Under the pieces are notes generated by a model. It was not told where the DNA came from and did not search any database. It saw only the letters and a list, made by a program, of their open reading frames with translations. A DNA stretch of 64,000 nucleotides from Malacoraja senta (taxonomy: Eukaryota): assembly GCA_038087875.1 (NCBI GenBank), contig CM075998.1, forward strand, positions 930,001 through 994,000. The letters are read 5' to 3'. Numbering within the stretch: the stretch's first letter is position 1; every line of letters starts with the position of its first letter. Below are positions 4,141 to 27,164 of the stretch, in pieces. The position numbers and the translations under genes are program-made.

Positions 4141-6393
4141 TCATGAGGTTTGTAGATGTGGAAAATATACTCCGGGAAGGAACCCTTTAAATTAAAAAAT
4201 CTCAAATGAGTTGATGATCCGTTTACATTCCAATTATATATTGGATCATGATCTATTATTGCCTGGGGCTGCCCGCTTTAATTTAAAAGCTGCACTGTTG
4301 ACTGGCAGAAAGGAGATGTCTAGACAATTCTTCTATCATTGAAGCTTTGTGGCTGCATATGACTCGGATTAAAACCCCCCACAAAACCTTCCTCCTTTCT
4401 TTCTGAAAAAATGTTTTTGTTTTATGTAACCTGATGAACTCGGCAGGTCGAGCAGCATCTGGAGGCAAAGGGATGGGAGGTTTTGCTCCAGATGCCAGCA
4501 TCTGCAGTCTCTTATGTGACTACACAAAATTCACATGCAACTATCCTCCTCTCAGAGCAGTTTTCTGGTCAAATTGTGCTCCCTTTGTGAGTTTCTGCAA
4601 TTTGTCTTCCCAGCTCTTTACAAAAATAAACATTTTCAAAATAAAGTGTCTTTGCTTCACAGTACTGTCATAAACCTTTCCCATCACCTCAGATGATACA
4701 TTTAAAAAGTTCACCAAATACATGAAGAGAAAAAATATTAGATGGATACATTACTCTGTTCAGCACCAAACTTGGGATGGTTCTACACATATTTATCTTT
4801 CATTTGGTTGCTGGATGCTGATGCGTTTTACTAGTGCCAGTGTATGTGGTGCAGGACAAACCATACTGGAGAGTGTGGTTTCCATGAGAACACTGGTGTT
4901 TTCTGTTGCTTAGTTCCAGAGGCTATGGGGAATGGTTTGCTGAAATAGCTCAGAGCCAGTTAGTGACAGTAGTCCCATGATTTATCTGATGGTAAGACAA
5001 AATGCTGGAGTAACTCAGCAGGTCAAGCAGCATCTCTGGAGAACATGGTGTTTTGTTTTGGAACCCTTCTTCAGACTGATAGTGCTTGGGCTCAGTGGAG
5101 GATTACAATTGTTTTTTTACCTTGTTTGTGTTTTAATGATGAAAAAATGTAGTCCATGATAAACTACCATGCCTCATGTCTTAAATACTTTGTTGTGTAA
5201 AGTGATGAAGAGATTGAAGTTTGACAAACGGTTTAATTAAGGATGCTGTAAAATAACAAAAGTGAAAAATAATAATTTGGAAAAGAAAACACAGTTAATG
5301 AAGAAGACAATGTTCACAACAATTTATTTTACAGATTTTCAGAAAAAATTCCCCTCCTAATGAGCCGTGAGCTTTCTGAAGTTGCTCACGTGCCTGTTTG
5401 TCAAGTAGGAACTTCAACAGTAATTTCATAAAAAGCTTTGCATTGATATTGCGCCTTGTCACACTTCTCCCAGAATGCCACAGAGCCGCAGTGAGTGACA
5501 CCAAACTTCAACCCTAACTCAGGTTGCTGAGATTAATTGCAGCGTGGCTGATGATGTCTTGGTTGGTTTGATTCCGTGCAGACCAAGAATTGTTCAAAGA
5601 CTATTTGGTGTGTCGGAGTTCTGCTGCATTGTCAACTGAGCTGTGGGGGAAATCTATAAAGTAGAAAACTATGCATTTCAATAGCGCCATATCACATCGC
5701 CCTTAAAATGTTTTGCATATGATGATGTACGTATTAAAGGTATGAAGGTAAATGCAGTTGCCATTTTTGCACATAAATAGCATCCCATAAATGATAAATG
5801 ATCAGTTAATGTATTTCGATAGTGTTGGTTCAGGACACCAGAATTACCCAAAAAACCTCTTTTGACATTTTTACTAATTCATGAGAATGTCAATGTCCTC
5901 CTCATCAGGCAGATTAGGTTAATCTGTTTAACGAGTCAACCACCATACTTTACCAGGGTCTGCTGAGATTGAGAGTTCAGATACTGGCTGGTACTGAAAC
6001 CAAAACCTTCAAACATCTTGGTGAGAAAACGACCAACACCTGTAATAATCATGAGTTATTGTGAATATAATTTTCTTTCTAAAATAAACTAATCTTCTTT
6101 GGTTTCCTCTTCTGATTTCTACCTTATGTCCTCTTGTTCAAAAATGTTTTAAAAAGACCATGATAAATATTTTGAGGAGTCACATTTTCACCAAAAGAAC
6201 TTGGATGTTCCTGTTGGGTGAACCCTCAAATTATGCTGTGTTTCACTTTTAATATAATTAAAATCATCATATAATACTTTCTAGTGGACAGATGCCTTTA
6301 GAATTTCACGAGACATTGAACAGGAATCGGGAGAAGAAAAAGCCCTGTTTAATTAATTCTCGGTGAAGAACTTTCTCCATTTGATGAACGAAA

Positions 6394-7410
6394 TCATGAA
6401 ATCACCACAATGTGTCTGGTGTCTGAAGAAATGGACACATCGTCATCTTCCTTGGCATATTTCTTGGGCAAAAACTTCACAATGTTGGTTGCAAAATGAT
6501 ACCTGAAATCTTTGTGCATAAAGTTGAAGAGGATGGGATTTATAATGCAGCGAGTACAGGCGAGGCACACAGTAAATTCATAAAAAAAATAAACTGCATA
6601 CTCTATGGTACAGTTTTGTTCATAATCCATCAGCGCAGCGAGTATGAGGAAGTAATAAGGGGAGCAACAGATTAAGAATGTTATGATGTAAGCATATATT
6701 AATTTACAGGTCCTTATGATTTCTTTGTTACCGGAGGCTTTAGCAGCTTTTGCAGTGACGATGTTGCTCACAATGATAATGGGAAAGGGGATAATAAGCC
6801 CAAAAATTAGGGTTAAAGAACCGTGAACATACCAAGACCTCAGGCTATCCAAGAAGCAGTAGTTATAGTCATATCCATACATTTGGTGAAATAAATAGTT
6901 TGGTATGGACAATACCACAGCCAGAGTCCACACGGACACACAAATCAGCCTACGGATGCGTCGATCCCTGGATCCTTGAGCCTGGGCTGGGTACCGCAGT
7001 GAGAAGTATCTGTCCAAACACGAGCTGACCAAGAAAAAGGAGCTGCTGTACAGATTAAGGCAATACAGGAAGCCATTGAGTTTGCACAAAAAGGAGCCCC
7101 AGACCCAACGGTGATGAAAGGAGATCTTTGTCATCCTGAATGGGATCATTAACACAGCAATCATGTCACTGATGGCTAAATTAAAAATATATAAGTTGCT
7201 TTCTTTCTTGGCCTTTTTCATCTGCCAGTTTATCCAAAGAACAAGAATGTTGTCTACCAGACCCACTACAAAGATTAGCAGGTATAAACCAAGCATTATA
7301 TACATCATTGCTTCTCTATCCATGTGGGTAACACATTGGCACCAGGGAGGGCTGCAATCTTTAGTAGTGGTGTTGCTGCTGCTAGGGCTGGTCACAGTTG
7401 AGTCCTCCAT
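6394..7410 (-). CDS. GPR182: GPR182 (ACKR5)-like class A GPCR, paralog A, 338 aa, single coding exon
   Basis: Seven hydrophobic segments; GLVDN (TM1), NLAISD (TM2), WVWGSFLC, NLYSSxFFL..DRY, NPILFNF. Splice acceptor (tgcag) 7 nt upstream of the ATG, Kozak tccATGG. Syntenic with PRIM1/NACA as in human 12q13.3. Confidence 0.85.
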   Translation of the reverse strand: MEDSTVTSPSSSNTTTKDCSPPWCQCVTHMDREAMMYIMLGLYLLIFVVGLVDNILVLWINWQMKKAKKESNLYIFNLAISDMIAVLMIPFRMTKISFHHRWVWGSFLCKLNGFLYCLNLYSSSFFLVSSCLDRYFSLRYPAQAQGSRDRRIRRLICVSVWTLAVVLSIPNYLFHQMYGYDYNYCFLDSLRSWYVHGSLTLIFGLIIPFPIIIVSNIVTAKAAKASGNKEIIRTCKLIYAYIITFLICCSPYYFLILAALMDYEQNCTIEYAVYFFYEFTVCLACTRCIINPILFNFMHKDFRYHFATNIVKFLPKKYAKEDDDVSISSDTRHIVVIS

Positions 7411-7616
7411 GGAGAACCTGCAGATATTAAAACAATTGTAATTTTTAGATTTAATAACATTTCCATTTGCAGCCTTCGAACACAGCTGATCCCCTTGCTC
7501 TGATGTTCTCCTGCACTGTTAGGTATATGTCTAATTCCTCTTTTCAATGTATGATCGACTTGGCTTCAGAGGCCATTTATCTTTTTAATTTGTTACCAAT
7601 TGCCCGCAGATGGCTG

Positions 7617-7713
7617 TTTAAGAAGGAACTGCGCATGCTGGAAAATCGAAGGTACAGAAAAATGCTGGAGAAACTCAGCGGGTGCAGCAGCATCTATGGA
7701 GCGAAGGAAATAG
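7617..7713 (-). mobile_element. Short Penelope terminal-repeat insertion with 15-bp TSD
   Basis: tttaagaaggaactgc...ggaaatag is flanked by gcccgcagatggctg at 7602-7616 and 7714-7728. The empty site is present in the paralog at ~22551-22565. Confidence 0.85.
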
Positions 7714-10700
7714 GCCCGCAGATGGCTGCTGACTTAAAAAAAAAGGCTGTGTGGTCCTTTGGTGAAATGCTCAATTTCCACTGCTTTTTGAGGGGAATTT
7801 TAGGTTTCTATTGCCTTTGCATGAAGGATTGTTAAAGCTGTTTGATCTCCCTTTACAAACTGCCCCAGACCTCAGCAGGGAATGGGGATTGAAGCTTCCA
7901 GCCTAGGGGCTTTATTCCAGCAATTTACAGTCTATTTCCGCGCTGAATGGCTCTATGAATCGCACCTTCACCTGGAAGGACCCCGTTAGGACCCTAGACA
8001 AAAGAAAGGTAGGAGGAATGGTCCTTTCTTTCTGAGATAGTTGAGAGCCCTCAACCATGCCTATTCCATTTCTTCTCTCACCCCCTGTATTAGCCAGAGC
8101 AAGGATAGGGTTCCTCTTATCCTCACCTTCCACCCCATTAACCTCGACATCCAATGGATCATCCTCTTTAATCTCCCACCACCTCCAATGAGATGCTAGC
8201 AAGTGATGCATCTTCCCCTCTGCCTGCATTCTGAAAGGACTTATTGTTGGTATGATCTGCTATAATTACTTTTTAAAAACTCTGCTCAAACAACCACGTA
8301 TTAAATATGATCTTATAAATCAGGTCTGAAATGTTTTAAAAAAAGAACAGAAAATGTTGGAAATGGCGGTTGAGACAACAACTATGGAGTGAAAAACAGT
8401 TATTGTTTCAGATCAATCACGTTTCATGACTGCTCTTTGCAAAGAGCAGTTCTGAAACACAATTGATCTGAAAATCAGGTTATGATATCAAAACTATGCC
8501 TCGACTGTTGCGTTTCTTGGAAACAGTACAATGTAGAGATCACAACTAAAGCACAAAATAATGAAATCAATAGATAATATTTTCCATTACAAGCCCATTG
8601 TTCAGTTTTCAAAGCAATGTCGGAATAAAGTTGCGACTGACCTGAATAAGTGTTTCTTTCACTGCTGTGTGAATTGCTCCACCGGAGAACAAATGTTTGC
8701 AAATGATTGTGAGGTTTAATATTTATGGATGTTTGAAGCGGGAGGAAGGAAAGTGAGGGGAGATTTTACAGTAAACAGGAAACCACGGGAATTATATGTA
8801 CCCAATGCTCATGGGGACAGAAGGTGTTGCAAGATAATGAATATTTTGTCCGGCTTTGGCTTTGAAAAGTCAGCATCTTTACTTTCCCAAACGAGGTAAA
8901 TAACTGGCTAAATGTGCAACGTACAAAGCCAGACTAAATCGGCAGAGGTCATTTTATTGTGTAAAATGTGTATGGAGATGGGTGGGGAGAAGTGTGGGGA
9001 CCACTTTCAAAATTAAGTCTTACATTATGTTGGCTTGTATTTGCTTCCTCTCCTTACCCAAAGCATAAAGGTCCTAAGATTTGTTACTGGGTCACACAAA
9101 TCTTGTTTGATCGCAGCTCGTAGGATACAACTGTGTCAGCTAAAGGGATGCTTCATGTTACTAAAGGACGCCTAAGATGAGAAAAGTGGTACAGCTGTGA
9201 TAACTCTGCAATAGACATCATCAGGGCAATTGTGACCAATGGAATTGTGCCCTGTCTGTGTCGCCATGAGAGTATGAATAAAAACTGAAGGAATAAGCCT
9301 TCTCAGAATGTCAGGTGATTGCTTAGGATCATACCTTTGATCACTTAGGATATGTATAGAGATGTTTATAAATGGACAAGATTAAGCTCGGGCTCATCAA
9401 TTTAAGTCACTGGCAAATTCCATTGGGAATTCAAGATAAAACTTCTTAACCCGAAGAATGGTCTTTTTTGAGCTTTATGATTATTGTCAACTTTGTGGGG
9501 GGAAATAGGAAGGAAGCTAGTAGAATATATCCTCAAATACAATAAAGATAGATTTTTCAAAATATGTCTACTAGAAAAATAAATATATTTTTGGACACTA
9601 ACAATAACGAAAACATATGGAGACCCTTCCTCAGACTGATTCCTCCAGAACTTCCGGAGATCAGCTGGTTAAGCAATAACTCTGGAGGCAAAGAGATGAT
9701 CGTTGTTCAATCAAGACCCTGCATCTCTCTCTTTATCAGTTCTGATGAACAGTCTTTGATTTGAAACGTTAAGTTTCTCTTCCAATAGATGCTGCCTGAA
9801 ATGTTGAGGCTTAGCCAGCATTTTCAGCTTTTATTCTAATAGATAATGGACAATCATATCTGGAAGCTTCATCTTAACATTTCTCATCATATTGTTTAAG
9901 GCTAGTAGGATGAGGATTGCATGTGGCTAAGGAGGATGTTACTTATTATTATGGTGTATTGTAAGTATTTTTATGATTAGTAATCTTAATTAAACGTAAA
10001 TGATTAAATGTCAGATATAAATTGTATAGTAATTGAAATAAATATAGCTGAAAAAATGTATGGAATTGTAAATTGTAATATATTTAATTGTGGTCGGGGT
10101 TGAATAAAGGGTGGAAGTTTAAGTAAATTACCGTTAATTGCACAAAAAATGTATTAAAGTACATTTATATTTGTAAGGATATTTAAAAATATGTGCAAAG
10201 TAAATATATTCACATAGAATGTAGATTTGATTTCACTGCATAAAACATTTTATATAACTGTCTACATTTTGTGAAAAGTTGTGCTGGTTCAGGAAATTTT
10301 CCTTTCACTATTACTTTTCTCAACATTATGTCACATTTGTTTGTATTGAGTTGTGTCAGCTCAGAAGTAGGTGGGAGGTTGCACGAGAAGTGAAGGGGGA
10401 AAGTTGAAATGGATTTCATATAGAAGGGAACTAAAGATTGAGTTAAATCTGAGACAAAACAAATTATGTGGGGATTAGGGCATCGATTAGAAAACTATGA
10501 TTTTCAAAGTAACAGCACAGTGGATTGTGTCCTTTGTTGGCAGTGGCAGTGGATTGTGGGGATTTGAAAAGTGAATTTGCTGAGCTTTACAATTAAAGAC
10601 TGGATACCAGCACCCCCCCCCCCATTACGCCTAACACCTATTGTGCATTTGACTTTTTGTTCCGTATCCTGTCTCCTGTATTTTGCTGCTTTCTGAAAAA

Positions 10701-11329
10701 TACTTCCTGATAGGGTTTTTTGTTAGAGACTCGACAAGAAATGTCAATCAGTGAAGGAGTCCAAAGGAACAGAACATTACTGAGGTTGCACGCAAATCAG
10801 CAAGCAGAAGGAAAATTTTCTTGGAGTAGGCCAGGCCTTCACATTCACAATGGAAGCAGCAGGAAAATGTGATCAAACACAGGACAAAGGGACTCTACTA
10901 GCACTACTGCTCTGAGGCAACTGGCTTGATCCATTGTATGGGTCAAATCCTGAGATCTTCCCGATCTGCCATTAAATGAGATCCTGGTAATTCTGAACTT
11001 TTAAAGTCTATTTATCCATCACTGATTCACATAAAGTCTCTAATTTCAATATACACAACAACAGTATTTGCGGTGATTTTTTTCAACATTATTAGAAGGG
11101 AAGTTGCACGACACAGCAGGGCTTAAAGTAGTAAGAAATATGTTTTAATTTGTCAACATTTCAAGTACATTTTGAGCAGGCTCATAACCACTGGACAGTT
11201 ACTTTACAAAAGGAATGGATACTTCTGCTGACAATGAAAAATAAAACTATTGGATTATTACAGTCGTTCAGATGAAAACTATGTGGGTGTAGGTAGAATG
11301 AAAATCTTGCTTGCAGTAGCATCGCAGGC

Positions 11330-11900
11330 TGAGACAACAGACAGAAACAAAAATTATACGTGAATTGCACAAATTCTACAAGAAAAGACAAAAGGCTTTG
11401 CACAATTGTGCAAAAATGCATAATTGGGAAACGAGTCCATCGTAGTGCAAGAGATGGCCCGAACTGTTCCATTGCCGAGGTAGGAGTAAGATTATCCGGG
11501 TAGTTTCAAGAACTTGATGGTTGTAAGAAAGTAGCTGTTCCTGAACTTGATGGCGTGGGGCTTCAAGCTTCAATACCTCCTACCCGATGGTAGCAGCGAA
11601 GGGAGGGCATGGCTCGGATGTTGGGGATCCTCGATGAGGTATACCGTTTGAGGCAGTGTTTAAGAAGGAACTGCAGATGCTGGAACATTGAAGGTAGACA
11701 AAAATGCTGGAGAAACTCAGCGGGTGCAGCAGCATCTATGGAGCGAAGGAAATAAGCAACGTTTCGGGCCGAAACCCTTCTTCAGTGCCTCGTGTTAATG
11801 CTTTCGATGCTGGGGAAGGCTGTGCACATAATCTGAACTCGGCTGAGTCCAACATTCTTCGTGATTACATCTGAGACCAGGACAGGTCACCCTAGATATT
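11330..11900 (-). mobile_element. Rex1/Babar-like LINE 3' fragment (duplicated at ~25940-26500), interrupted by a Penelope terminal repeat
   Basis: Minus-strand translation around KFRNSYFLTTIKFL resembles the Rex1 C-terminal RFRNSFFPxxIRLL motif. Confidence 0.5.
11659..11785 (-). mobile_element. Penelope terminal repeat with minimal hammerhead motif (identical copy at ~26265-26391)
   Basis: Same repeat as that flanking the GIY-YIG ORFs. Minus strand reads CTGAAGA-A-GGG-TTTCGG-CCC-GAAA-CG-TT; flanked by cagtg on both sides. Confidence 0.8.
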
Positions 11901-12580
11901 AATGCTCAGGAATTTGTACCTATCCATGTTCTCCAGAGATGCTGCCTGACCCACTGAGTTACTCCAGCACTCTGTGTCCTCTTGTGTAAAGCAGCATCTG
12001 CAGTTCCTTGTTTCTATATTTGATTCTTTAATCGTTCCCTGAGGTTTAAGTGAAAGTGTGCGGACGGATTGTCTTCCATGTGGACGCCGCGCTTGGGCGG
12101 GAACTAAGGCGGCTGCTCGTTCCTCCCCGCGAGAGCTTGGGCGAGATCGATGGGCGAGGGCGACACAAAGGCGGGATTGTCCACGTGAGGCAGCCGCGGC
12201 TTTAAATTCAGCTTCAGTTGACGCTGGCCGAGGTGGTGTGTGTGGAGAACCGGGGGTGGCATAATCCCTGTGAAATCACGAATTCTCTATGAAATCGTTG
12301 TTTAAAGAAAGAATATTGAAGCTGATTGTTTATCGATACACCTTTTTAGCTTCCCCCTCCCCCCACACAAGGTGCGCTGACCATTTCAGTCATTACTTTT
12401 TTTTCTAGAATTATCATTTTGTACTTTTCCGTTCCTGAACGGTAAGTTTGCGAGTGCGATTTCATAAAAACAGTGGGATTTTAAATTGGATCTGTCTTGT
12501 CATCCAATAAATTAATTCATGTTGTGTTCTTTCCAGTTTCGGAACTTCGCTGGAGTTGGTAAGTTTGATGACTTGTGAAG

Positions 12581-13685
12581 CATAGAAACATAGACAATAG
12601 GTGCAGGAGTAGGCCATTCGGCCCTTCGAGCCTGCACCGCCATTCAATGTGATCATGGCTGATCATCCAACTCAGTATCCTGTACCTGCCTTCTCTCCAT
12701 ACCCCCTGATCCCTTTAGCCACAAGGGCCACATCTAACTCCCTCTTAAATATAGCCAATGAACTGGCCTCAACTACCTTCTGTGGCAGAGAGTTCCAGAG
12801 ATTCACCACTCTCTGTGTGAAAAATGTTCTCATCTCAGTCCTAAAAGACTTCCCTCTTATCCTTAAACTGTGACCCCCTTGTTCTGGACTTCCCCAACAT
12901 CGGGAACAATCTTCCTGCATCTAGCCTATCCAACCCCTTAAGAATTCTGTACGTTTCTATAAGATCCCCCCTCAATCTTCTAAATTCCAGCGAGTACAAG
13001 CCGGGTCTATCCATTCTTCATATGAAAGTCCTGACATCCCAGAAATCAGTCTGGTGAACCTTCTCTGCACTCCCTCTATGGCAAGAATGCCTTTCCTCAG
13101 ATTAGGAGACCAAAACTGTACACAATACTCCAGGTGTGGCCTCACCACGACCCTGTACAACTGCAGTAGAATCTCCCTGCTCCTATACTCACATCCTTTT
13201 GCTATGAATGTTAACATACCATTCGCTTTCTTCACTGCTTGCTGCACCTGCATGCCTACTTTCAATGACTGGTGTACCATGACACCCAGGTCTCGTTGCA
13301 TCTCCCCTTTTCCTAATCTTCCACCATTCAGATAATAGTCTTTCCTGTTTTTGCCACCAAAATGGATAACCTCACATTTATCCACATTATACTGCATCTG
13401 CCATGCATTTGCCCACTCACCCAACCTATCCAAGTCACCTTGCAGCCTCCTAGCATCCTCCTCACAGCTAACACTGCCCCCCAGCTTCGTGTCATCCGCA
13501 AACTTGGAGATGTTGCATTCAATTCCCTCGTCCAGATCATTAATATATATTGTAAATAGCTGGGGTCCCAGCACTGAGCCTTGCGGTACCCCACTAGTCA
13601 CTACCTGCCATTCTGAAAAGGACCCGTTTACTCCTACTCTTTGCTTCCTGTCTGCCAGCCAGTTCTCTATCCACATCAATACTGA
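12581..13685 (-). mobile_element. 5'-truncated CR1 LINE (RT C-terminal half and 3' tail)
   Basis: SGVPQGSVLGP, YINDLD, SKFADDTKL and HLEYCVQFWSP in ORF 12972..13880. Tail catagaaacataga at 12581. Confidence 0.95.
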
Positions 13686-15465
13686 AAGATTGTAATTCCC
13701 TTGTGTGTAGATGAAAGGCAGAAACTTGGGAGGGGTGGGTTGGTGAGAGAGGTGACAAGGTGAGAGAGTGTTGATGGGAACATGCAGAGAATAGGTTACA
13801 GGGACAATCAGTGGGGGAACAGGGAACAGGGAGACTAGACTTAATATGCCAAAATAGCCTCCTTCTCTGTCTTCATACATTTTTTTATGCTGTATGAATA
13901 TGTGTCCAGCAGTTACTGATTCTGCTTGTTCCTTTCCGAATATGTGTCTCCATGAGGACTCTCATTGTGACCAGGAATAGCTGGATAAAGTCACCATTTT
14001 TCTTCTGTAGAGGAAGCATACGGTAGTTTTCTCTGTGATCATGTCGAAAATTAGTAATGAGAAGGAAAAGTTTGATTGAGTTTGAACTCGTCAGCCAGAA
14101 TTTTCCTCCCCTTATCCATCGGGAACGTTGCTCTTCGTCCTCCCCCTGTCTCCTGTGTGCACATAATAATGCTTCTGACTCTAAGGCTCTTTGGCATAAC
14201 CTTGTGGTGCTTCAGGAAATTGGTTGGGTTGAGGTGAATCCAGTGGGGTGAACAGAGCATATTCTGCTATCTCTGTGCAAAAGAGAAAACATTGGTATGT
14301 AGTTTCTTAACTGAGAAGGAAAACACCCAAGTTCAGGCCATCCCTGCGTAAACAACGGGTTTTGTTTTTATATGTGTCCATCAATTGATTTTGTCCATGT
14401 TGGAAATTACACAATAATCACTTGATATAGCAACCATGCCTCCACAGAAATGTAATAAATGGCATCAAAAGGACATAAGATTGATAAGAAAGAACAATTA
14501 CTGGAAGTGGAGAGAGCGGAAACTACTTCTGCCGTTCGTAGGAACGAACGTATGCACACACGTCAGATGTTTGAATGTATTAATATTATGGGCGCTCATT
14601 AATATATAGGGGTGTCCATAAATTGGGCATTTGTAATCCAGGGATGGTCTGAAATGAAAGGAAATGTTAAATGCTGGAACTAATTGTGTTGGCCTTAAAT
14701 TTCAAACTTGGCTGGTTAGCCTATCTTGAGCTCTTTAACTTCTAGGTCTACAAGATTCCTTTTAAATTTTAGCAAATAGAACACATCCTATCTCCATTGG
14801 TGATCCCAAAAATGTTCATTACTTGGATATTTTTTTGTGTATAAAATATTTGTCAAGAAGGGTAATGTAAATTTTTATAAAGCTGTTGTGTAATAGTGAC
14901 AGTGGGCTGGCATCTATAAAGTACATATGCTGCTGTAGAGGTGGCTGATGCTGGAGTACTGCGGTACATTAGAAGAATACTTGTAACTGCATAGTATATT
15001 TTGGGAGAGATTAGGATCAATTAAATCATGCTGGGATTATGTTAAATCCACTTGATTCTTGGATTATGCATTTTATTAGATGTGCCTAGTTGTAACACAG
15101 AAAATTAAAGATGTGAACATATTTATGAAGATGTGATTCTGTATTTGTAGATGTTTATGTTATTAACGATAATTCTGATTCCTCTATTTTTGGCCTTGGT
15201 ATTCAGGAAAAGGAAAGGACACATCTCAAAACAAAGACAAAATTTCCTGAAGGTAGATAGATTTATCAATACATTTGTCACCATCAAAAGAAGGCAAAGA
15301 CATATATAACATATAGCATATAACCATAACAGCACGGAAACAGGCCATCTCGGCCCTTCAAGTCCGTGCCGAACATTTTTTAAATTATTATTATTTTTTT
15401 TTTTAATTAAAAATAAATACTTCCCCCTAGTCCCATCTACCTGCACTCAGACCATAACCCTCCAT

Positions 15466-18372
15466 TCATTTCCCGTCCATATACCCATCCAATCTATTTT
15501 TAAAGGATAAAATCGAACATGTCTCCACCACTTCCACTGGAAGCTCATTCCACACAGCTACCACTCTCTGAGTAAAGAAGTTCCCCGTAATGTTACCCCT
15601 AAACTTCTGTCCCTTAATTCTCAAGTCATGTCCCCTTGTTTGAATCTTCCCTACTCTCAATGGAAAAAGCTTATCCACGTCCACCCTGTCTAACCCGCTC
15701 ACAATTTTAAAGACCTCTATCACGTCCCCTCTTAACCTTCTGCGCTCCAAAGAATAAAGACCTAACTTGTTCAACCTTTCTCTGTAACTTGGTTGCTGAA
15801 ACCCAGGCAACATTCTAGTAAATCTCCTCTGTACTCTCTCTATTTTGTTGACATCCTTCCTATAATTAGGCGACCAAAATTGTACTCCATACTCCAGAAT
15901 TGGCCTCACCAATGCCTTGTACAATTTTAACATTACATCCCAACTTCTATATTCAATGCTCTGATTTATAAAGGCCAGCACACCAAAAGCTTTCTTTACC
16001 ACCCTATCTACATGAGATTCCACCTTCAGGGAACTATGCACAGTTATTCCTAGATCCCTCTGTTCAACTGCATTCCTCAATTCGCTACCATTTACCGTGT
16101 ACGTCCTATTTTGATTTGTCCTGCCGAGATGTAGCACCTCACATTTGTCAGCATTAAACTCCATCTGCCATCTTTCAGCCCACTCTTCCAAATGGCCTAA
16201 ATCTCTCTGTAGACTTTGAAAATCTACTTCATTATCCACAACACCACCTATCATAGTATCATCTGCATACTTACTAATCCAATTTTCCACACCATCATCC
16301 AGATCATTGATGTACATGACAAACAACAGTGGACCCAACACAGACCCCTGAGGCACCCCACTAGTCACCGGCCTCCAACCTGACAAACAGCCATCCACCA
16401 TTACTCTCTGGCATCTCCCATTCAGCCACTGTTGAATCCATCTTGCTACTCCACCATTAATACCCAACAATTGAATCTTCTTAACCAACCTTCCATGAGG
16501 AACCTTGTCAAAGGCCTTACTGAAGTCCATATAGACAACATCCACTGCTTTACCCTCATCAATTTCCCTAGTAACCTCTTCGAAAAATTCAAGAAGATTA
16601 GTCAAGCATGACCTTCCAGGCACAAATCCATGTTGACTGTTCCTAATCAGACCCTGCTTATCCAGATGCTTATATATATTATCTTTAAGTATCCTTTCCA
16701 TTAATTTGCCCACCACTGACGTCAAACTAACAGGTCTATAATTGCTAGGTTTACTCTTCGAACCCTTTTTAAACAACGGAACAACATGCGCAGTACGCCA
16801 ATCCTCCGGCACTATTCCCGTTTCTAATGACATTTGAAATATTTCTGTCATAGCCCCTGCTATTTCTACACTAACTTCCCTCAATGTCCTAGGGAATATC
16901 CTGTCAGGACCTGGAGACTTATCCGTTTTCATATTTTTCAAAAGTGTCCGCACCTCCTCTTCTTTGAATCTCACAGTTTCCATTGCTACTCTGCTTATTT
17001 CCCTTACCTCACATAATTCCATATCCTTCTCCTTCGTGAATACCGAAGAAAAGAAATTGTTCAATATCTCCCCCATCTCTTTTGGCTCTGCAGATAGCTG
17101 TCCACTCTGACTCTCTAAAGGACCAATTTTATTCCTTGTTATCCTTTTGCTATTAATATAGCTGTAGAAACCCTTTGGATTTACTTTCACCTTACTTGCC
17201 AAAGCAACCTCATATCTTCTTTTAGCTTTTCTAATTTCTTTCTTAATATTCTTTTTACATTCTTTATACTCCTCAAGCACCTCATTTACTCCATGCTGCC
17301 TATAATTATTGTAGATCTCTCTCTTTTTCCGAACCAAGTGTCCAATTTCCCTTGAAAACCATGGCTCTTTCCATTTTTTACTATTTCCTTTCAACCGAAC
17401 AGGGACATAAAGATTCTGTACTCTTAGAATTTCACCCTTAAATGTCCTCCATTTTTCTTCTACATCCTTCCCATAAAACAACATGTCCCAATTCACTCCT
17501 TTTAAATCCTTTCGCATCTCCTCAAAGTTAGCCTTTCTCCAAACAAAAATCTCAACCCTAGGTCCAGTTCTGACCCTCTCCATAATTATATTGAAACTAA
17601 TGGTATTGTGATCACTGGACCCGAAGTGCTCCCCGACGCATACCTCCGCCACCTGCCCTGTCTCATTTCCTAACAGGAGGTCCAGCACTGCCCCTTCTCT
17701 AGTAGGTACCTCTATGTATTGCTGCAAAAAACTATCTTGCACACATTTTACAAACTCCAAACCATCCAGCCCTTTTACAGAATGTGTTTCCCAGTCTATG
17801 TGTGGAAAATTGAAATCTCCCACAATCACTACCTTTTGCTTACTACTAATATCTGCTATCTCCTTACATATTTGCTCTTCCAATTCTCGCTCCCCATTTG
17901 GCGGTCTATAATACACCCCTATAAGTGTTGCTACACCTTTCCCATTTCTCAGTTCCACCCAAATAGCCTCCCTAGACGAGCCCTCTAATCTATCCTGCCA
18001 AAGCACTGCTGTAATATCTTCCTTGACAAGCAATGCACCACCCCCACCTCTTGCCCCTCCAATTCTATCACCCCTGAAGCAACGAAATCCTGGAATATTT
18101 ATTTGCCAATCACAGCCCTCCTGCAACCATGTTTCACTGATCGCCACAACATCATACTTCCAGGTGTCAATCCAGGCTCTAAGCTCATCCACCTTTCTGA
18201 CAATGCTCCTAGCATTAAAATATACACATTTAAGAAACCCACCACCACTTATTCTCTGTTTATTATCTTTTTCCTCTTTCTCCCCTACATTTTGGGTCCG
18301 GGTGCTTCCCTTCTCTGCCTCCTGCCTCCCACATTTTCCACTAGCTTTCTCTATTTGAGTCCCTCCCCCCAA
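15466..18372 (-). CDS. CR1 ORF2: APE endonuclease + reverse transcriptase, 968 aa uninterrupted
   Basis: EN motifs NARS, ISETWL, YRPP, GDFN, SDH. RT motifs KSPGPD, NYRPVSL, DFSKAFDKV, PQGSVLGP, YADD. The ORF begins at TTG, with no ATG at its start. Confidence 0.93.
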   Translation of the reverse strand: MGGGTQIEKASGKCGRQEAEKGSTRTQNVGEKEEKDNKQRISGGGFLKCVYFNARSIVRKVDELRAWIDTWKYDVVAISETWLQEGCDWQINIPGFRCFRGDRIGGARGGGGALLVKEDITAVLWQDRLEGSSREAIWVELRNGKGVATLIGVYYRPPNGERELEEQICKEIADISSKQKVVIVGDFNFPHIDWETHSVKGLDGLEFVKCVQDSFLQQYIEVPTREGAVLDLLLGNETGQVAEVCVGEHFGSSDHNTISFNIIMERVRTGPRVEIFVWRKANFEEMRKDLKGVNWDMLFYGKDVEEKWRTFKGEILRVQNLYVPVRLKGNSKKWKEPWFSREIGHLVRKKREIYNNYRQHGVNEVLEEYKECKKNIKKEIRKAKRRYEVALASKVKVNPKGFYSYINSKRITRNKIGPLESQSGQLSAEPKEMGEILNNFFSSVFTKEKDMELCEVREISRVAMETVRFKEEEVRTLLKNMKTDKSPGPDRIFPRTLREVSVEIAGAMTEIFQMSLETGIVPEDWRTAHVVPLFKKGSKSKPSNYRPVSLTSVVGKLMERILKDNIYKHLDKQGLIRNSQHGFVPGRSCLTNLLEFFEEVTREIDEGKAVDVVYMDFSKAFDKVPHGRLVKKIQLLGINGGVARWIQQWLNGRCQRVMVDGCLSGWRPVTSGVPQGSVLGPLLFVMYINDLDDGVENWISKYADDTMIGGVVDNEVDFQSLQRDLGHLEEWAERWQMEFNADKCEVLHLGRTNQNRTYTVNGSELRNAVEQRDLGITVHSSLKVESHVDRVVKKAFGVLAFINQSIEYRSWDVMLKLYKALVRPILEYGVQFWSPNYRKDVNKIERVQRRFTRMLPGFQQPSYRERLNKLGLYSLERRRLRGDVIEVFKIVSGLDRVDVDKLFPLRVGKIQTRGHDLRIKGQKFRGNITGNFFTQRVVAVWNELPVEVVETCSILSFKNRLDGYMDGK

Positions 18373-18382
18373 CTGTTCTAGT

Positions 18383-18957
18383 TTAAAGTCTCCCCAGTAG
18401 CCTTTGCAAATCTCCCCGCCAGGATATTGGTCCCCTCGGGTTCAAGTGCAACCCGTCCTTTCTGTACAGGTCACACCTTCCCCAAAAGAGGTCCCAATGA
18501 TCCAGAAATTTGAATCCCTGCCCGCTGCACCAGTTCCTCAGCCACGCATTTATCCTCCACCTCACTCCATTCCTACTCTCACCGTCGCGTGGCACAGGTA
18601 GTAATCCTGAGATTGTTACCTTTGTAGTCCTTCTCCTTAACTCTCCTCCCAACTCCCTAAATTCTCCTTTCAAGACCTCTTCTCTTTTTCTACCTATGTC
18701 ATTGGTACCTATATGTACCACAACCTCAGGCTCCTCTCCCTCCGATTTCAGGATATCTTGGACGCGTTCAGACACATCCCTGACCCTGGCACCAGGGAGG
18801 CAAACTACCATCCGGGTCTCCTGACTGCATCCACAGAATCGCCTATCCGACCCCCTAACCATAGAGTCCCCTATTACTATTGCCCTCCTCTTCTTTTCCC
18901 TACCCTTCTGAGCAATAGGGCTGGTCTCTGTGCCGGAGGCCCGGCCGCTGTTGCTAC
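18383..18957 (-). CDS. CR1 ORF1 C-terminal SGNH/GDSL esterase domain (5' truncated, apparent 1-nt frameshift near the end)
   Basis: IGDSMVRG, CLPGARV, HIGTNDIG, DGLHLN. One G is missing in a G-run near 18432 relative to the frame that would read TNILAGRFAK. Confidence 0.8.
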
Positions 18958-21336
18958 CCATCTTTCTATTTTGTTCTTTGGAAAAAGGACAGACAAACTT
19001 AATATTTCCAATACATAGAGCCCATGAGTTTCTGGTCTGTGGGATTATTGGACAAAAATGAAGCATTATAAATGTTACAAGGTAAGTCATCTAAGGCAAT
19101 TATAGTGCAGCACCAGGAGGTGCAATTACTTGTGATTTAGGAACAGGTCGCATATTGGTCCTTTTCTTCTTGGAATGATAACTGTTTGAGATTTGAGGAG
19201 GTTGATCAAAAATCTCAAATGAGTTGATTTTAAATGATACGTTTACATTCCAATTATATATTGGATCATGATCTATTATTGCCTGGGGCTGCCCGCTTTA
19301 ATTAAAAAGCTGCACTGTTGGCTGACAGAGAGGAGATGTCTAGACAATTCTTTTATCATTGAAGCTTAGTGGCTGCACTGCTGTATATGACTCGGATTAA
19401 AAAAAACACAAAACCTTCCTCCTTTCTTTCTAAAAAAATGTTTTGTTTTATGTATCCTGATGAACTCGGCAGGTCGAGCAGCATCTGTGGAGGCAAAGGG
19501 ATGGGAGGTCAAATTGTGCTCCCTTCTTTGTGAGTTTCTGCAATTTGTCTTCCCAGCTCTTTATAAAAATAAACATTTTCAAAATAAAGTGTCTTTGTTT
19601 CACAGTACTGAGTCATAAACCTTTCCCATCACCTCAGATGATACATTTAAAAAGTTTACCAAATACATGAAGAGAAAAAATATTAGATGGATACATTACT
19701 CTGTTCAGCACCAAACTTGGGATGGTTCTACACATATTTATCTTTCATTTGGTTGCTGGATGCTGATGCGTTTTACTAGTGCCAGTGTATGTGGTGCAGG
19801 ACAAACCATACTGGAGAGTGTGGTTTCCATGAGAACACTGGTGTTTTCTGTTGCTTAGTTCCAGAGGCTATGGGGAATGGTTTGCTGAAATAGCTCAGAG
19901 CCAGTTAGTGACAGTAGTCCCATGATTTATCTGATGGTAAGACAAAATGCTGGAGTAACTCAGCAGGTCAAGCAGCATCTCTGGAGAACATGGTGTTTTG
20001 TTTTGGAACCCTTCTTCAGACTGATAGTGCTTGGGCTCAGTGGAGGATTACAATTGTTTTTTTACCTTGTTTGTGTTTTAATGATGAAAAAATGTAGTCC
20101 ATGATAAACTACCATGCCTCATGTCTTAAATACTTTGTTGTGTAAAGTGATGAAGAGATTGAAGTTTGACAAACGGTTTAATTAAGGATGCTGTAAAATA
20201 ACAAAAGTGAAAAATAATAATTTGGAAAAGAAAACACAGTTAATGAAGAAGACAATGTTCACAACAATTTATTTTACAGATTTTCAGACAAATTCCCCTC
20301 CTAATGAGCCGTGAGCTTTCTGAAGTTGCTCACGTGCCTGTTTGTCAAGTAGGAACTTCAACAGTGATTTCATAAAAAGCTTTGCATTGATATTGCGCCT
20401 TGTCACACTTCTCCCAGAATGCCACAGAGCCGCAGTGAGTGACACCAAACTTCAACCCTAACTCAGGTTGCTGAGATTAATTGCAGCGTGGCTGATGATG
20501 TCTTGGTTGGTTGATTCCATGCAGACCAAGAATTGTTCAAAGACTATTTGGTGTGTCGGAGTTCTGCTGCATTGTCAACTGAGCTGTGGGGGAAATCTAT
20601 AAAGTAGAAAACTATGCATTTCAATAGCGCCATATCACATCGCCCTTAAAATGTTTTGCATATGTTGATGTACGTATTAAAGGTATGAAGGTAAATGCAG
20701 TTGCCATTTTTGCGCATAAATAGCATCCCATAAATGATAAATGATCAGTTAATGTATTTCGATAGTGTTGGTTCAGGACACCAGAATTACCCAAAAAACC
20801 TCTTTTGACATTTTTACTAATTCATGAGAATGTCAATGTCCTCCTCATCAGGCAGATTAGGTTAATCTGTTTAACGAGTCAACCACCATACTTTACCAGG
20901 GTCTGCTGAGATTGAGAGTTCAGATACTGGCTGGTACTGAAACCAAAACCTTCAAACATCTTGGTGAGAAAACGACCAACACCTGTAATAATCATGAGTT
21001 ATTGTGAATATAATTTTCTTTCTAAAATAAACTAATCTTCTTTGGTTTCCTCTTCTGATTTCTACCTTATGTCCTCTTGTTCAAAAATGTTTTAAAAAGA
21101 CCATGATAAATATTTTGAGGAGTCACATTTTCACCAAAAGAACTTGGATGTTCCTGTTGGGTGAACCCTCAAATTATGCTGTGTTTCACTTTTAATATAA
21201 TTAAAATCATCATATAATACTTTCTAGTGGACAGATGCCTTTAGAATTTCACGAGACATTGAACAGGAATCGGGAGAAGAAAAAGCCCTGTTTAATTAAT
21301 TCTCGGTGAAGAACTTTCTCCATTTGATGAACGAAA

Positions 21337-22350
21337 TCATGAAATCACCACAATGTGTCTGGTGTCTGAAGAAATGGACACATCGTCATCTTCCTTGGCA
21401 TATTTCTTGGGCAAAAACTTCACAATGTTGGTTGCAAAATGATACCTGAAATCTTTGTGCATAAAGTTGAAGAGGATGGGATTTAAAATGCAGTGGGTAC
21501 AGGTGAGGCACACAGTGAAGTCATAAAAAAAATAAAGTGCATACAGAATGAAACAGTTTTGTTCAGAATCGATCAGCTCAGCGAGTATGAGGAAGTAATA
21601 AGGGGACCAACAGATTAAGAATGTTATGATGTAAGCATATATTAATTTACAGGTCCTTATGATTTCTTTGTTACCGGAGGCTTTAGCAGCTTTTGCAGTG
21701 ACGATGTTGCTCACAATGATAATGGGAAAGGGGATAATAAGCCCAAAAATTAGGGTTAAAGAACCGTGAACATACCAAGACCTCAGGCTATCCAAGAAGC
21801 AGTAGTTATAGTCATATCCATACATTTGGTGAAATAAATAGTTTGGTATGGACAATACCACAGCCAGAGTCCACACGGACACACAAATCAGCCTACGGAT
21901 GCGTCGATCCCTGGATCCTTGAGCCTGGGCTGGGTACCGCAGTGAGTAGTATCTGTCCACACTTGAGCTGAGCAAGAAAAATGCGCTGCTGTACAGATTA
22001 AGGCTATACAGGAAGCCATCGAGTTTGCACAAAAAGGAGCCCCAGACCCAACGGTAATCTAAGGAGATTTCTGCCATCCTGAATGGTATTATTAACACAG
22101 CGCTCATGTCACTGATGGCTAAATTAAAAATATATAAGTTGCTTTCTTTCTTGGCCTTTTTCATCTGCCAGTTTATCCAAAGAACAAGAATGTTCTCCAC
22201 CAGACCCACTACAAAGATTAGCAGGTATAAACAAAGCGTTATATACATAATTGCTTCTCCATCCATGTGGGGAAGACATTCGCATTCGGGAGCGCTGCAA
22301 TCTTTAGTGGTGTTGCTGCTGCTAGGGCTGGTCACAGTTGAGTCCTCCAT
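21337..22350 (-). CDS. GPR182: GPR182 (ACKR5)-like class A GPCR, paralog B, 337 aa, single coding exon
   Basis: GLVENILV, SVDRY, CWSPY and HCILNPIL match GPR182-type motifs. About 89% identical to paralog A, with the same acceptor/ATG arrangement. Confidence 0.87.
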   Translation of the reverse strand: MEDSTVTSPSSSNTTKDCSAPECECLPHMDGEAIMYITLCLYLLIFVVGLVENILVLWINWQMKKAKKESNLYIFNLAISDMSAVLIIPFRMAEISLDYRWVWGSFLCKLDGFLYSLNLYSSAFFLLSSSVDRYYSLRYPAQAQGSRDRRIRRLICVSVWTLAVVLSIPNYLFHQMYGYDYNYCFLDSLRSWYVHGSLTLIFGLIIPFPIIIVSNIVTAKAAKASGNKEIIRTCKLIYAYIITFLICWSPYYFLILAELIDSEQNCFILYALYFFYDFTVCLTCTHCILNPILFNFMHKDFRYHFATNIVKFLPKKYAKEDDDVSISSDTRHIVVIS

Positions 22351-26659: not shown

Positions 26660-27164
26660 AAGTGTGCGGACGGATTGTCTTCCATGTGGACGCCGCGCTT
26701 GGGCGGGAACTAAGGCGGCTGCTCGTTCCTCCCCGCGAGAGCTTGGGCGAGATCGATGGGCGAGGGCGACACAAAGGCGGGATTGTCCACGTGAGGCAGC
26801 CGCGGCTTTAAATTCAGCTTCAGTTGACGCTGGCCGAGGTGGTGTGTGTGGAGAACCGGGGGTGGCATAATCCCTGTGAAATCACGAATTCTCTATGAAA
26901 TCGTTGTTTAAAGAAAGAATATTGAAGCTGATTGTTTATCGATACACCTTTTTAGCTTCCCCCTCCCCCCACACAAGGTGCGCTGACCATTTCAGTCATT
27001 ACTTTTTTTTCTAGAATTATCATTTTGTACTTTTCCGTTCCTGAACGGTAAGTTTGCGAGTGCGATTTCATAAAAACAGTGGGATTTTAAATTGGATCTG
27101 TCTTGTCATCCAATAAATTAATTCATGTTGTGTTCTTTCCAGTTTCGGAACTTCGCTGGAGTTG
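26660..27164 (+). promoter_or_regulatory. CpG promoter and non-coding 5' exons of the orphan coiled-coil gene
   Basis: GGCGGGA at 26702 and 26776, CACGTG at 26788. Donor gtaagt at 27048. A 22-nt exon at 27143-27164 (ttctttccag...gtaagt). Confidence 0.6.

What the first reader, a model, noticed from the sequence alone, without database searches (positions are those of the whole stretch)
6394..22350. Duplicated GPR182-like receptors diverge in clusters at ligand-facing segments while flanking DNA is near-identical
Seen: about 35 substitutions plus 1 indel separate the two proteins. All fall in N-terminus to TM3 (24) and TM6-ECL3-TM7 (11), including charge changes (TKISFHH vs AEISLDY; WCQ vs ECE; R vs G). 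TM4-ECL2-TM5 and the C-tail are identical, and ~1.8 kb of 3' non-coding sequence is almost identical. Known: GPR182 is a single-copy atypical chemokine scavenger receptor in mammals, and N-terminus/ECL charge governs chemokine binding. Inference: diversifying selection on ligand specificity that resists homogenising gene conversion, suggesting a lineage-specific receptor pair.
Basis: partly seen in the sequence, partly recalled or inferred. Interest (0 to 1): 0.7.

Follow-up and report, generated by a model that had tools for sequence, protein, structure and literature searches.

The report
Skate GPR182 tandem duplicates, partly homogenised
A skate genome carries two tandem copies of the chemokine-scavenger receptor gene GPR182 that gene conversion keeps partly identical; one copy stays conservative, the other has changed residues fixed from sharks to birds, and adaptive divergence is possible but unproven.

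Summary
They lie in a real ~8.4 kb tandem duplication with different outer flanks.

The mosaic is at the DNA level. All 10 synonymous differences fall in the same blocks as the replacements. Codons 137-248, and codon 291 through about 2.1 kb of 3' sequence, are gene-conversion tracts (permutation P 0.02 to below 1e-4).

The divergent islands are also the fastest-changing parts between orthologous skate genes. Pairwise dN/dS is 0.9-1.0.

The split is old. Unconverted non-coding DNA differs by 3.4%, against 4.2% to Amblyraja radiata, whose locus shows a similar layout. The pair is therefore probably not specific to this species.

Divergence is asymmetric. Copy B keeps every deeply conserved residue (omega about 0.4). 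Copy A alone changes seven residues conserved in at least 25 of 28 orthologues, including E95K, W249C and H287R. Omega above 1 for A is nominal (p 0.01-0.055) and rests on one synonymous change.

I read A as released from constraint, more likely decaying than adaptively retuned. This is a new member of a known kind: partial concerted evolution of chemokine-receptor duplicates.

The parts
6394..7410 (-). Copy A coding exon (338 aa, GPR182-like 7TM receptor). This is the derived copy: E53D, E95K, Y100H, D112N, S131C, W249C, D278E, H287R.
21337..22350 (-). Copy B coding exon (337 aa). It retains all deeply conserved residues, has a B-derived loss of one Thr codon in the N-terminus, and has a more acidic N-terminus.
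8642..8710 (-). Copy A non-coding exon 1. A TATA-like box lies just upstream (with an A-specific 1-nt change) and the GT donor is intact. The intron runs to the AG acceptor; exon 2 starts at 7420.
   Evidence: Spliced Leucoraja RNA contigs mapped to L002; alignments A2 and A3; coordinates
23503..23571 (-). Copy B non-coding exon 1, with promoter-proximal sequence, GT donor and AG acceptor intact (exon 2 starts at 22360). A B-derived 112-bp deletion lies inside the intron.
4195..12580 (-). Duplicated unit A. Its downstream flank continues into the ancestral downstream DNA, which is collinear with Leucoraja and Rhinoraja.
19208..27186 (-). Duplicated unit B. Its upstream flank continues into the ancestral upstream DNA (block S, to about 40856).
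11341..12580 (.). Very recent conversion tract (B counterpart 25947-27186): 0 differences in 1240 bp, with 16 A+B shared derived sites and no private ones.
6665..7003 (.). Conversion tract in the middle of the CDS (codons 137-248, TM4-ECL2-TM5-ICL3; B counterpart 21608-21946): 0 differences, against 18 to Amblyraja.
4430..6542 (.). Conversion tract covering codon 291 to the stop, the 3'UTR and the 3' flank (B counterpart about 19456-21485): 8 mismatches in 2.1 kb, 27 A+B shared derived sites.
6543..6664 (.). Unconverted island 3 (TM6 top, ECL3, TM7; B counterpart 21486-21607): 16 differences in 122 bp.
7004..7847 (.). Unconverted 5' block: the last part of the intron plus codons 1-136. The CDS differences sit in two islands, nt 61-159 (13) and nt 251-407 (19).
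12581..19207 (.). Spacer between the copies. It holds a truncated LINE RT fragment (12581-13686). It also holds S', a partial second copy of the distal part of block S (13690-15297 and 18958-19212, matching 38114-40748), which is split by a 3.66-kb LINE (15298-18957).
28521..40856 (.). Block S, the ancestral upstream region of the gene. Its distal 2.6 kb recurs downstream of copy B. In Amblyraja the whole block recurs downstream of the gene.

Best explanation
The finding is a genuine, old tandem duplication of the skate orthologue of GPR182 (ACKR5). GPR182 is a two-exon gene for an atypical chemokine-scavenger receptor. Both copies keep a promoter-proximal region, a non-coding exon 1, splice sites and an open coding exon.

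The two copies evolve by partial concerted evolution. Interlocus gene conversion has recently overwritten three stretches: 1.24 kb far upstream, codons 137-248, and codon 291 through the 3'UTR. The rest keeps a divergence (3.4% in non-coding DNA) almost as deep as the split from Amblyraja/Leucoraja (4.2-5%).

Inside the unconverted coding sequence, the differences pile up in three islands: the N-terminus, TM2-ECL1-TM3, and TM6-ECL3-TM7. These are the intrinsically fast-changing parts of this receptor in every skate lineage (omega about 1 between orthologues). High divergence itself also hinders conversion.

Divergence is asymmetric. Copy B behaves as the working ancestral-type receptor (omega about 0.4, no hit at any deeply conserved residue). 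Copy A has been released from the ancestral constraint. It has 13 unambiguous replacements against 1 synonymous change. Seven of those replacements are at residues conserved from sharks to birds, including E2.63K, W6.48C and H7.45R in the pocket core.

Shown: the duplication, the conversion tracts, the age, the asymmetry. Inferred: A is more likely drifting toward loss of function, with its ORF partly refreshed by conversion (my odds about 55%), than adaptively retuned to a new ligand (about 30%).
For: Duplication and its distinct outer flanks.

Family: Pfam 7tm_1 at E 1e-43 and 4e-46. Best hits are annotated GPR182 from skates (87%, 80% identity), sharks (54-60%) and tetrapods (about 40%, E 1e-70), against CCR8/CCR4 at E 1e-28. 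The closest solved structure is ACKR3.

Conversion: all 10 synonymous differences lie in the divergent blocks and none elsewhere. Converted regions show 27 and 16 A+B shared derived sites with 0-3 private ones; unconverted regions show 6 shared against 34 and 36 private. Permutation P<1e-4, 2e-4 and 0.02.

Islands are hot spots between orthologues, and omega is 0.8-1.1 between orthologues in codons 1-136.

Age and sharing. The Amblyraja locus has block S on both sides of the gene, and its junction lies within 108 bp and 720 bp of the window's.

Asymmetry: polarised changes. Branch codon model gives omega_A 4.6-8, omega_B 0.41-0.46, and A differs from B at p 0.002-0.006. Seven of seven conserved-site deviations are in A.

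Intact gene structure in both copies.
Against: An intact 338-codon ORF and intact splice and promoter elements in A argue mildly for retained function. There are no frameshifts in 534 bp of unconverted CDS, where about 3.3 were expected for both copies together (P about 0.04). For A alone this is only P about 0.19.

Omega_A above 1 is nominally significant, and the charge shifts are directional in both copies; both could mean adaptation.

The phylogenetic signal in the coding islands is conflicting: 4 sites group B with Amblyraja+Leucoraja, 1 groups A with them, 1 groups A with B, and AU p is 0.2.

No expression or read-depth data exist for the window species. The second Amblyraja copy was not seen, because it would lie beyond the fetched flank.
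Confidence: 0.6

Rival explanations
1. Both copies are functional, and diversifying selection on ligand specificity keeps the ligand-facing segments distinct against ongoing gene conversion. Copy A is a neofunctionalised scavenger or decoy with a remodelled, less acidic pocket.
For: Omega_A is 4.6-8, against 1 at p 0.01 (tree T1) and p 0.037-0.055 (tree T2). A 122-bp island with 13% divergence survives between two converted tracts. There is a 7-unit difference in extracellular net charge, built from changes in both copies: B gains E23, E25 and D99; A has E95K, D112N and H287R. The ORF, splice sites and TATA-like box of A are intact. The CDS blocks carry more differences (48 in 534 nt) than the non-coding rate predicts. 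In CCR2/CCR5, conversion likewise never includes the N-terminus (PMC8877049).
Against: Pairwise omega is 0.89-1.0. The same islands have omega about 1 and are hot spots between orthologues, so nothing is specific to the pair. Omega_A above 1 rests on 1 synonymous change in A against 7 in B, which a clock does not allow; with equal synonymous rates omega_A is about 0.8. A hits conserved residues at or above the rate expected with no constraint at all (7 observed, 3.2 expected), including the universally kept W6.48. Divergence-limited conversion explains the island without selection.
Confidence: 0.27
2. Assembly artefact: two haplotypes of one gene falsely placed in tandem, or the identical tracts produced by collapse or mis-polishing.
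For: The tracts with 0 differences (1240 bp and 339 bp) and the near-identical 2.1 kb are what mis-polishing could give. No read data are available here.
Against: The copies have different outer flanks: A runs into the ancestral downstream DNA and B into the ancestral upstream DNA. The junction has the layout of a true tandem duplication. There is no N gap between them; the only N run is 57059-57258. The spacer is 6.6 kb with its own LINE insertion. The copies differ by 3.4% mismatches plus 29 indels, including 258-bp and 112-bp ones. An independent assembly of another genus (Amblyraja) shows the same upstream block on both sides of its gene.
Confidence: 0.05
3. A young, species-specific duplication in which both copies then evolved unusually fast in the coding islands, with no ancient origin. 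The similar layout in Amblyraja would be an independent event.
For: A-B (3.4%) and S-S' (about 3.2% mismatches) are slightly below the window-Amblyraja divergence of 4.2%. Six A+B shared derived sites exist in unconverted DNA. The two S ends in Amblyraja are 99.4% identical. A 2.4-kb piece is shared by S and S' but absent from the Amblyraja downstream copy.
Against: Independent non-homologous breakpoints within about 100 bp on one side are unlikely. No shared repeat sits at the junctions. Nine sites group B with Amblyraja+Leucoraja against two for A. Even on this reading the split is at least 80% as deep as the genus-level split, so it is not young.
Confidence: 0.25

Closest known systems
GPR182 / ACKR5 (atypical chemokine scavenger receptor; sister of ACKR3)
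   Same: 7TM rhodopsin-family fold. All best hits are annotated GPR182 from skates to birds. ACKR3 is the closest solved structure. The orthologous Leucoraja locus has a BTB/zinc-finger gene downstream, as ZBTB39 lies next to GPR182 in human (from memory). The Ser-rich C-tail is highly conserved (omega 0.03).
   Different: The gene is present as a tandem pair, whereas the ACKR3/GPR182 complement is reported constant through vertebrate evolution (PMC10792014). Copy A lacks E2.63, W6.48 and H7.45, which are invariant in all 28 orthologues compared. Ligand binding was not tested.
CCR2/CCR5 (and similar chemokine-receptor pairs) evolving by interlocus gene conversion
   Same: Adjacent paralogous chemokine-receptor genes with long homogenised tracts. 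The N-terminus is left out of conversion (PMC8877049). Extracellular domains evolve fast (PMC2880985, seen only as a listed title and abstract start and as a citation; not read).
   Different: This is a different receptor clade (atypical scavenger) and a cartilaginous fish. Divergence is strongly asymmetric, with one copy losing core conserved residues. Conversion also covers the 3'UTR and a far-upstream tract.
Young duplicate on the way to pseudogenisation, with its ORF refreshed by conversion from the functional paralogue
   Same: Omega about 1 or higher on one copy only. Replacements fall on conserved sites at the unconstrained rate. The converted tracts carry no private defects.
   Different: There is no stop or frameshift, the regulatory and splice elements are intact, and the copy has persisted for a period comparable to a genus-level split.

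Membership tests
GPR182 / ACKR5 | Class A 7TM receptor domain | tested here: met
   PF00001 at E 1.2e-43 (A) and 4.4e-46 (B), covering profile positions 1-259 of 260
GPR182 / ACKR5 | Sequence closest to GPR182 orthologues, clearly separated from other chemokine receptors | tested here: met
   Skate, shark and tetrapod GPR182 at E 1e-194 to 1e-58; the next family (CCR8/CCR4) at E 1e-28. ACKR3 is the top solved structure at 2e-53, against CCR1 at 5e-35.
GPR182 / ACKR5 | Conserved genomic neighbourhood (ZBTB39-like neighbour) | tested here: inconclusive
   A 704-aa BTB/C2H2 gene lies 9.8 kb downstream in Leucoraja. The window's downstream DNA is collinear with that locus, but the window ends before the gene. 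The human adjacency is from memory.
GPR182 / ACKR5 | Family-invariant residues (E2.63, W6.48, H7.45, and others conserved in at least 25 of 28 orthologues) | tested here: met
   Met for copy B (0 deviations among the A/B-differing sites). Not met for copy A (E95K, W249C, H287R plus 4 more).
GPR182 / ACKR5 | Binds and internalises chemokines without G-protein signalling | not testable with these tools
   Needs cell-based uptake and arrestin assays
Interlocus gene conversion (concerted evolution) | Tracts where paralogues share derived states and lack private differences, next to tracts that are as diverged as orthologues | tested here: met
   27 and 16 shared derived sites with 0-3 private in the tracts; 6 shared against 34 and 36 private outside them
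Interlocus gene conversion (concerted evolution) | Runs of concordant polymorphic sites longer than chance (Sawyer-type test) | tested here: met
   Runs of 103, 92 and 57 sites; P<1e-4, 2e-4 and 0.02 in 10,000 permutations
Interlocus gene conversion (concerted evolution) | Synonymous as well as replacement differences erased in the tracts | tested here: met
   0 synonymous differences in codons 137-248 and 291-338, against 10 in the other blocks
Positive (diversifying) selection between paralogues | dN/dS significantly above 1 in the divergent segments | tested here: not met
   Pairwise omega is 0.89 in the divergent blocks and 1.00 for the whole CDS
Positive (diversifying) selection between paralogues | Branch-specific omega above 1, robust to tree and clock | tested here: inconclusive
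   Omega_A is 4.6-8, p 0.01 (T1) and 0.037-0.055 (T2). It rests on 1 synonymous change in A against 7 in B.

The most novel reading that the evidence does not exclude
GPR182 was duplicated before the radiation of rajid skates and both copies have been kept since. Ligand-contact islands would be held apart by selection while conversion homogenises the rest. Copy A would be a neofunctionalised atypical receptor whose charge-shifted, W6.48-less pocket binds a different ligand class. The clustered variants among Leucoraja transcripts in the same islands would be the same pair in another genus.
Probability: 0.18. Interest if true: 0.6.

Novelty: new member of a known kind. Interest (0 to 1): 0.4.

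Why it matters
GPR182/ACKR5 was only recently recognised as a chemokine scavenger. A recent survey reports the ACKR3/GPR182 complement as constant through vertebrate evolution (PMC10792014). A retained tandem pair in skates would be an exception.

It would also be a natural experiment. One copy keeps the ancestral pocket. The other carries E2.63K, W6.48C and H7.45R. Everything from TM4 to TM5, and the tail, is identical. That is a ready-made chimera pair for asking which residues set ligand capture in this receptor.

It is also a clean worked example that 'differences cluster in ligand-facing loops' can arise from conversion-tract boundaries plus rate heterogeneity, without paralogue-specific selection.

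Tried and rejected
(1) Haplotype or assembly artefact. I rejected this as the main reading because of the distinct flanks, the spacer with its own LINE, the many indels and the similar layout in Amblyraja. It is not testable without reads.

(2) A third GPR182-like donor inside the window. tblastn found only the two copies.

(3) NAHR between repeats as a recurrent duplication mechanism. Only a 39-nt, 82% identical short repeat lies near, not at, the breakpoints.

(4) Resolving whether the duplication predates the Amblyraja split, using tree tests on the coding islands. The ML tree groups B with Amblyraja+Leucoraja (78% bootstrap), but the AU test does not reject the alternatives (p 0.2).

(5) Looking for a second annotated copy in Amblyraja, Leucoraja or Rhinoraja. 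There is one protein each in the homologue search and cluster listing. The 10-kb flanks are too short to reach a second copy.

(6) Earlier scan notes. Nothing relevant.

(7) Structure prediction was not run. The tools return no coordinates, so pocket mapping was done by alignment to ACKR3. The Ballesteros-Weinstein numbers are anchored on N54, D82, R134, P251 and P292, partly from my own knowledge.

(8) Using intact-ORF survival as proof that A is functional. For A alone, P is about 0.19 for frameshifts and about 0.5 for stops, so it is not decisive.


Full report
**1. What is there**

The window holds two intact minus-strand ORFs. Copy A is at 6394..7410 (338 aa) and copy B at 21337..22350 (337 aa). 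Both are rhodopsin-family 7TM receptors (PF00001, E 1e-43 and 4e-46).

BLASTP gives 302/338 identities and one gap. That is 35 substitutions (24 at residues 21-136 and 11 at residues 249-290) plus one codon indel. Residues 137-248 and 291-338 are identical.

**2. Family and source**

- The best database hits are annotated GPR182: Amblyraja radiata 87% identity, Leucoraja erinacea in the same 90% cluster, and Rhinoraja longicauda 80%.
- Sharks and rays follow at 54-60%, then tetrapod GPR182 at about 40% (E 1e-70).
- The next family (CCR8/CCR4) appears only at E 1e-28.
- The closest solved structure is ACKR3 (2e-53, against CCR1 at 5e-35). This fits the published ACKR3/GPR182 clade (PMC10792014).
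- Neither protein is in the collection by exact sequence.
- Non-coding divergence is about 4.2% to Amblyraja, about 5% to Leucoraja and about 14% to Rhinoraja.

The source is therefore another rajid skate. The species is unknown.

**3. Gene structure**

Spliced Leucoraja RNA contigs join a 71-nt non-coding exon (L002 5550-5620) to an acceptor 10 nt before the ATG. One contig carries what looks to me like a template-switch adaptor at its 5' end, which would make that end a true transcript start.

In the window the equivalent exon 1 is at 8642-8710 for copy A and 23503-23571 for copy B. The TATA-like box, GT donor and AG acceptor are conserved in both copies. A has a 1-nt change in the TATA-like box. 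Both copies therefore look structurally complete.

**4. The duplication**

- Self-BLAST shows a unit of about 8.4 kb present twice: 4195-12580 and 19208-27186.
- The outer flanks differ as a true tandem duplication predicts. Upstream of B, the sequence continues into a block I call S (to about 40856), which is the ancestral upstream region in Amblyraja and Rhinoraja. Downstream of A, it continues into DNA collinear with the Leucoraja and Rhinoraja downstream region.
- Between the copies lie a truncated LINE RT fragment (12581-13686) and S'. S' is a second copy of the distal 2.6 kb of S, split by a 3.66-kb LINE with open ORF1 (GDSL-esterase type) and ORF2 (endonuclease plus RT).
- No N run separates the copies.

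**5. A mosaic at the DNA level**

Along the unit, the mismatches fall into strata:

| Segment (A coordinates) | Differences |
|---|---|
| 12580-11341 | 0 in 1240 bp |
| 11340-8258 | about 3%, with 25 indels |
| 7847-7004 (intron end plus codons 1-136) | 49 in 844 bp |
| 7003-6665 (codons 137-248) | 0 in 339 bp |
| 6664-6543 (TM6-ECL3-TM7) | 16 in 122 bp |
| 6542-4430 | 8 in 2113 bp |

Nei-Gojobori counts give Sd=10 and Nd=38 for the CDS (omega 1.00). In the divergent blocks pS is 0.092 and pN 0.082 (omega 0.89). All ten synonymous differences lie in the same blocks as the replacements. The clustering is therefore not a protein-level pattern.

**6. Evidence for gene conversion**

I used Rhinoraja as outgroup.

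- The 3' flank has 27 derived sites shared by A and B, and 3 plus 3 private sites.
- The far-upstream tract has 16 shared derived sites and none private.
- The unconverted 5' regions have only 6 shared sites, against 34 A-private and 36 B-private.
- In the coding sequence, nt 408-746 shows 0 A-B differences but 18 to Amblyraja and 27 to Leucoraja.
- A Sawyer-type permutation over 528 polymorphic sites gives concordant runs of 103 (A 6538-5772, P<1e-4), 92 (5338-4713, P=2e-4) and 57 sites (6999-6673, mid-CDS, P=0.02).

**7. Why the remaining differences sit where they do**

The A-B coding differences form three islands: nt 61-159 (13), nt 251-407 (19) and nt 747-868 (16). The same islands are hot spots between orthologues. 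Amblyraja and Leucoraja differ there by 10, 10 and 7 sites, although their neutral divergence is only 2-3%.

By contrast, nt 1-60, nt 160-250 and nt 869-1017 are nearly invariant even to Rhinoraja. Their identity between A and B therefore says nothing about conversion.

Omega between orthologues is 0.8-1.1 in codons 1-136, 0.4-0.6 in codons 249-290, and 0.03 in the tail in comparisons with Rhinoraja.

The ratio of island differences to neutral divergence is about the same for A-B as for orthologue pairs. So the pattern 'divergence in N-terminus to TM3 and TM6 to TM7' has two causes. One is the receptor's intrinsic rate heterogeneity. The other is a recent conversion tract that erased the otherwise moderately variable TM4-TM5 segment. 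High divergence itself also limits conversion (established knowledge), so the 122-bp island needs no selection to persist. Selection is not excluded either.

**8. Age, and whether the pair is lineage-specific**

A-B non-coding divergence in unconverted DNA is 3.4%, and S against S' has about 3.2% mismatches. The divergence to Amblyraja is 4.2%. The stem shared by A and B is very short: 6 sites, of which roughly 2 are expected from homoplasy by my estimate, against about 35 private sites on each branch. In the coding islands only 1 site groups A with B, 4 group B with Amblyraja+Leucoraja and 1 groups A with them. The ML tree puts B with Amblyraja+Leucoraja (78% bootstrap), but the AU test does not reject the alternatives.

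Structurally, the Amblyraja gene is followed by block S (L001 13713-20967, matching window 40856 down to 28521). L001 1-312 repeats at 20656-20967 with 99.4% identity. So S flanks that gene on both sides, as it does for copy B here.

The junctions lie 108 bp apart on the S side and about 720 bp apart on the gene side. A single deletion would account for both offsets. No repeat sits at the breakpoints.

I therefore favour one duplication predating the split from Amblyraja (about 65%). An independent, slightly later event is not excluded. A second Amblyraja gene copy was not seen, because it would lie beyond the fetched flank.

**9. Asymmetry between the copies**

I polarised the 48 coding nucleotide differences with the three outgroups.

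| | Copy A | Copy B |
|---|---|---|
| Unambiguous derived changes | 14 | 14 |
| Replacement : synonymous | 13 : 1 | about 7 : 7 |
| Omega in my branch codon model | 4.6-8 | 0.41-0.46 |

The other 20 sites could not be polarised. The branch model was GY94-type with F3x4 frequencies, five taxa and the 177 gap-free codons of the divergent blocks. Background omega in it is about 1.0. A differs from B at p 0.002-0.006. Omega_A against 1 gives p 0.01 on tree T1 and 0.037-0.055 on tree T2.

This result depends on the near absence of synonymous change in A. Two paralogues in one genome should have equal synonymous branch lengths. With equal synonymous rates, omega_A is about 0.8. So omega_A above 1 is not robust.

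Across 28 GPR182 orthologues from sharks to birds, seven of the A/B-differing sites are conserved in at least 25 of 28. At all seven, A is the deviant:

- E53D
- E95K
- Y100H
- S131C
- W249C
- D278E
- H287R

E95, W249 and H287 are invariant in all 28. B keeps the consensus at every one.

A's replacements hit conserved codons at or above the rate expected with no constraint (7 observed, 3.2 expected). That enrichment is inflated by how 'A-derived' is ascertained, so I use only the 7:0 asymmetry.

By alignment to ACKR3, E95 is position 2.63, W249 is 6.48, E259 (Ala in A) is 6.58 and H287 is 7.45. These are pocket-core or toggle positions in chemokine receptors (established knowledge). Net charge of the extracellular segments is -4 in A and -11 in B; other skates are at -4 to -5. 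B has become more acidic in the N-terminus, and A more basic at ECL1 and the TM3 top.

**10. Is copy A alive?**

- Unconverted non-coding DNA carries 29 indel events in 3064 bp, 19 of them not a multiple of three.
- The 534 bp of unconverted CDS carries one, in frame and B-derived.
- That argues for selection against frameshifts over both copies together (P about 0.04). For A alone it is only P about 0.19.
- The converted tracts carry no private defects.

The data fit two readings. Either A is drifting toward loss while conversion refreshes two thirds of its ORF, or A has been remodelled for a new role. I put about 55% on the first and about 30% on the second.

**11. Comparison with what is known**

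Partial concerted evolution of adjacent chemokine-receptor genes is well documented for CCR2/CCR5, where the N-terminus is never part of a conversion (PMC8877049). A GPR182 duplication is not reported in the chemokine-system survey I read, which describes the ACKR3/GPR182 complement as constant through vertebrates (PMC10792014).

This is a new member of a known kind. It is of moderate interest to comparative immunology. It is also a caution that loop-clustered divergence can come from tract boundaries and rate heterogeneity.

**12. Limits**

- There are no reads, no expression data and no population data for the source species.
- Only five full coding sequences were available for polarisation, and only 10-kb flanks in the relatives.
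- The codon model is my own implementation, not codeml.
- The Ballesteros-Weinstein numbers and the human ZBTB39 adjacency rest partly on my own knowledge.

Noticed in passing
window 15298-18957 (-): A 3.66-kb LINE with both reading frames open: ORF2 at 15466-18372 (endonuclease plus RT) and an ORF1 with a GDSL-esterase/OSK-like domain (within 18383-19090). It is inserted into the S' spacer between the two receptor copies. It is absent from the matching site at 40492/40495, so it is a fairly recent and possibly still active element.
   Followed up: partly
L002, L004-L010 (Leucoraja erinacea genome and RNA contigs): Leucoraja transcripts give at least 6 protein variants. L004 and L005 differ at 25 coding sites, clustered in codons 93-124, 168-176 and 256-264, while their 3'UTRs are nearly the same. 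The genome copy is a mosaic of both types. This is the same pattern as A against B here. It suggests a second, unannotated paralogue or a long-lived polymorphism in Leucoraja.
   Followed up: partly
L001 1-312 and 20656-20967 (Amblyraja radiata CM021411.1): A 312-bp stretch is repeated at 99.4% identity, 20.65 kb apart, flanking the GPR182 gene. The similarity stops abruptly at 312/20967. Whether a second gene copy follows could not be seen.
   Followed up: partly
window 12581-13686; L001 5979-7093; L002 6050-7141; L003 5176-6267: A 1.1-kb LINE RT fragment, 91-94% identical between species, sits at different positions of the GPR182 upstream region or intron in each genus. It is inverted and lies at the duplication boundary in the window. 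A more distant copy is at window 422-1153. This is either repeated insertion of one family or local rearrangement.
   Followed up: no
window 3684-3762, 36254-36344, 41065-41103, 60439-60519: A short interspersed repeat (about 40-90 nt, 75-82% identical between copies) is scattered through the window. Two copies lie near, but not at, the duplication breakpoints.
   Followed up: partly
window 57059-57258: A 200-N run, the only gap or masked stretch in the window. The flanking 56-60 kb region is G-rich and GC-rich (GC 0.54 at 58-60 kb). I did not look further.
   Followed up: no
window 22566 (B), matching A 7728-7617: Copy B has a B-derived 112-bp deletion inside the 5'UTR intron. Copy A and both Amblyrajini orthologues keep the sequence.
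   Followed up: partly
skate GPR182 orthologues (L001-L003 CDS): The gene evolves fast in skates generally: whole-gene omega is 0.45-0.65 between orthologues and about 1 in codons 1-136. The Ser-rich C-tail is almost frozen (omega 0.03).
   Followed up: partly
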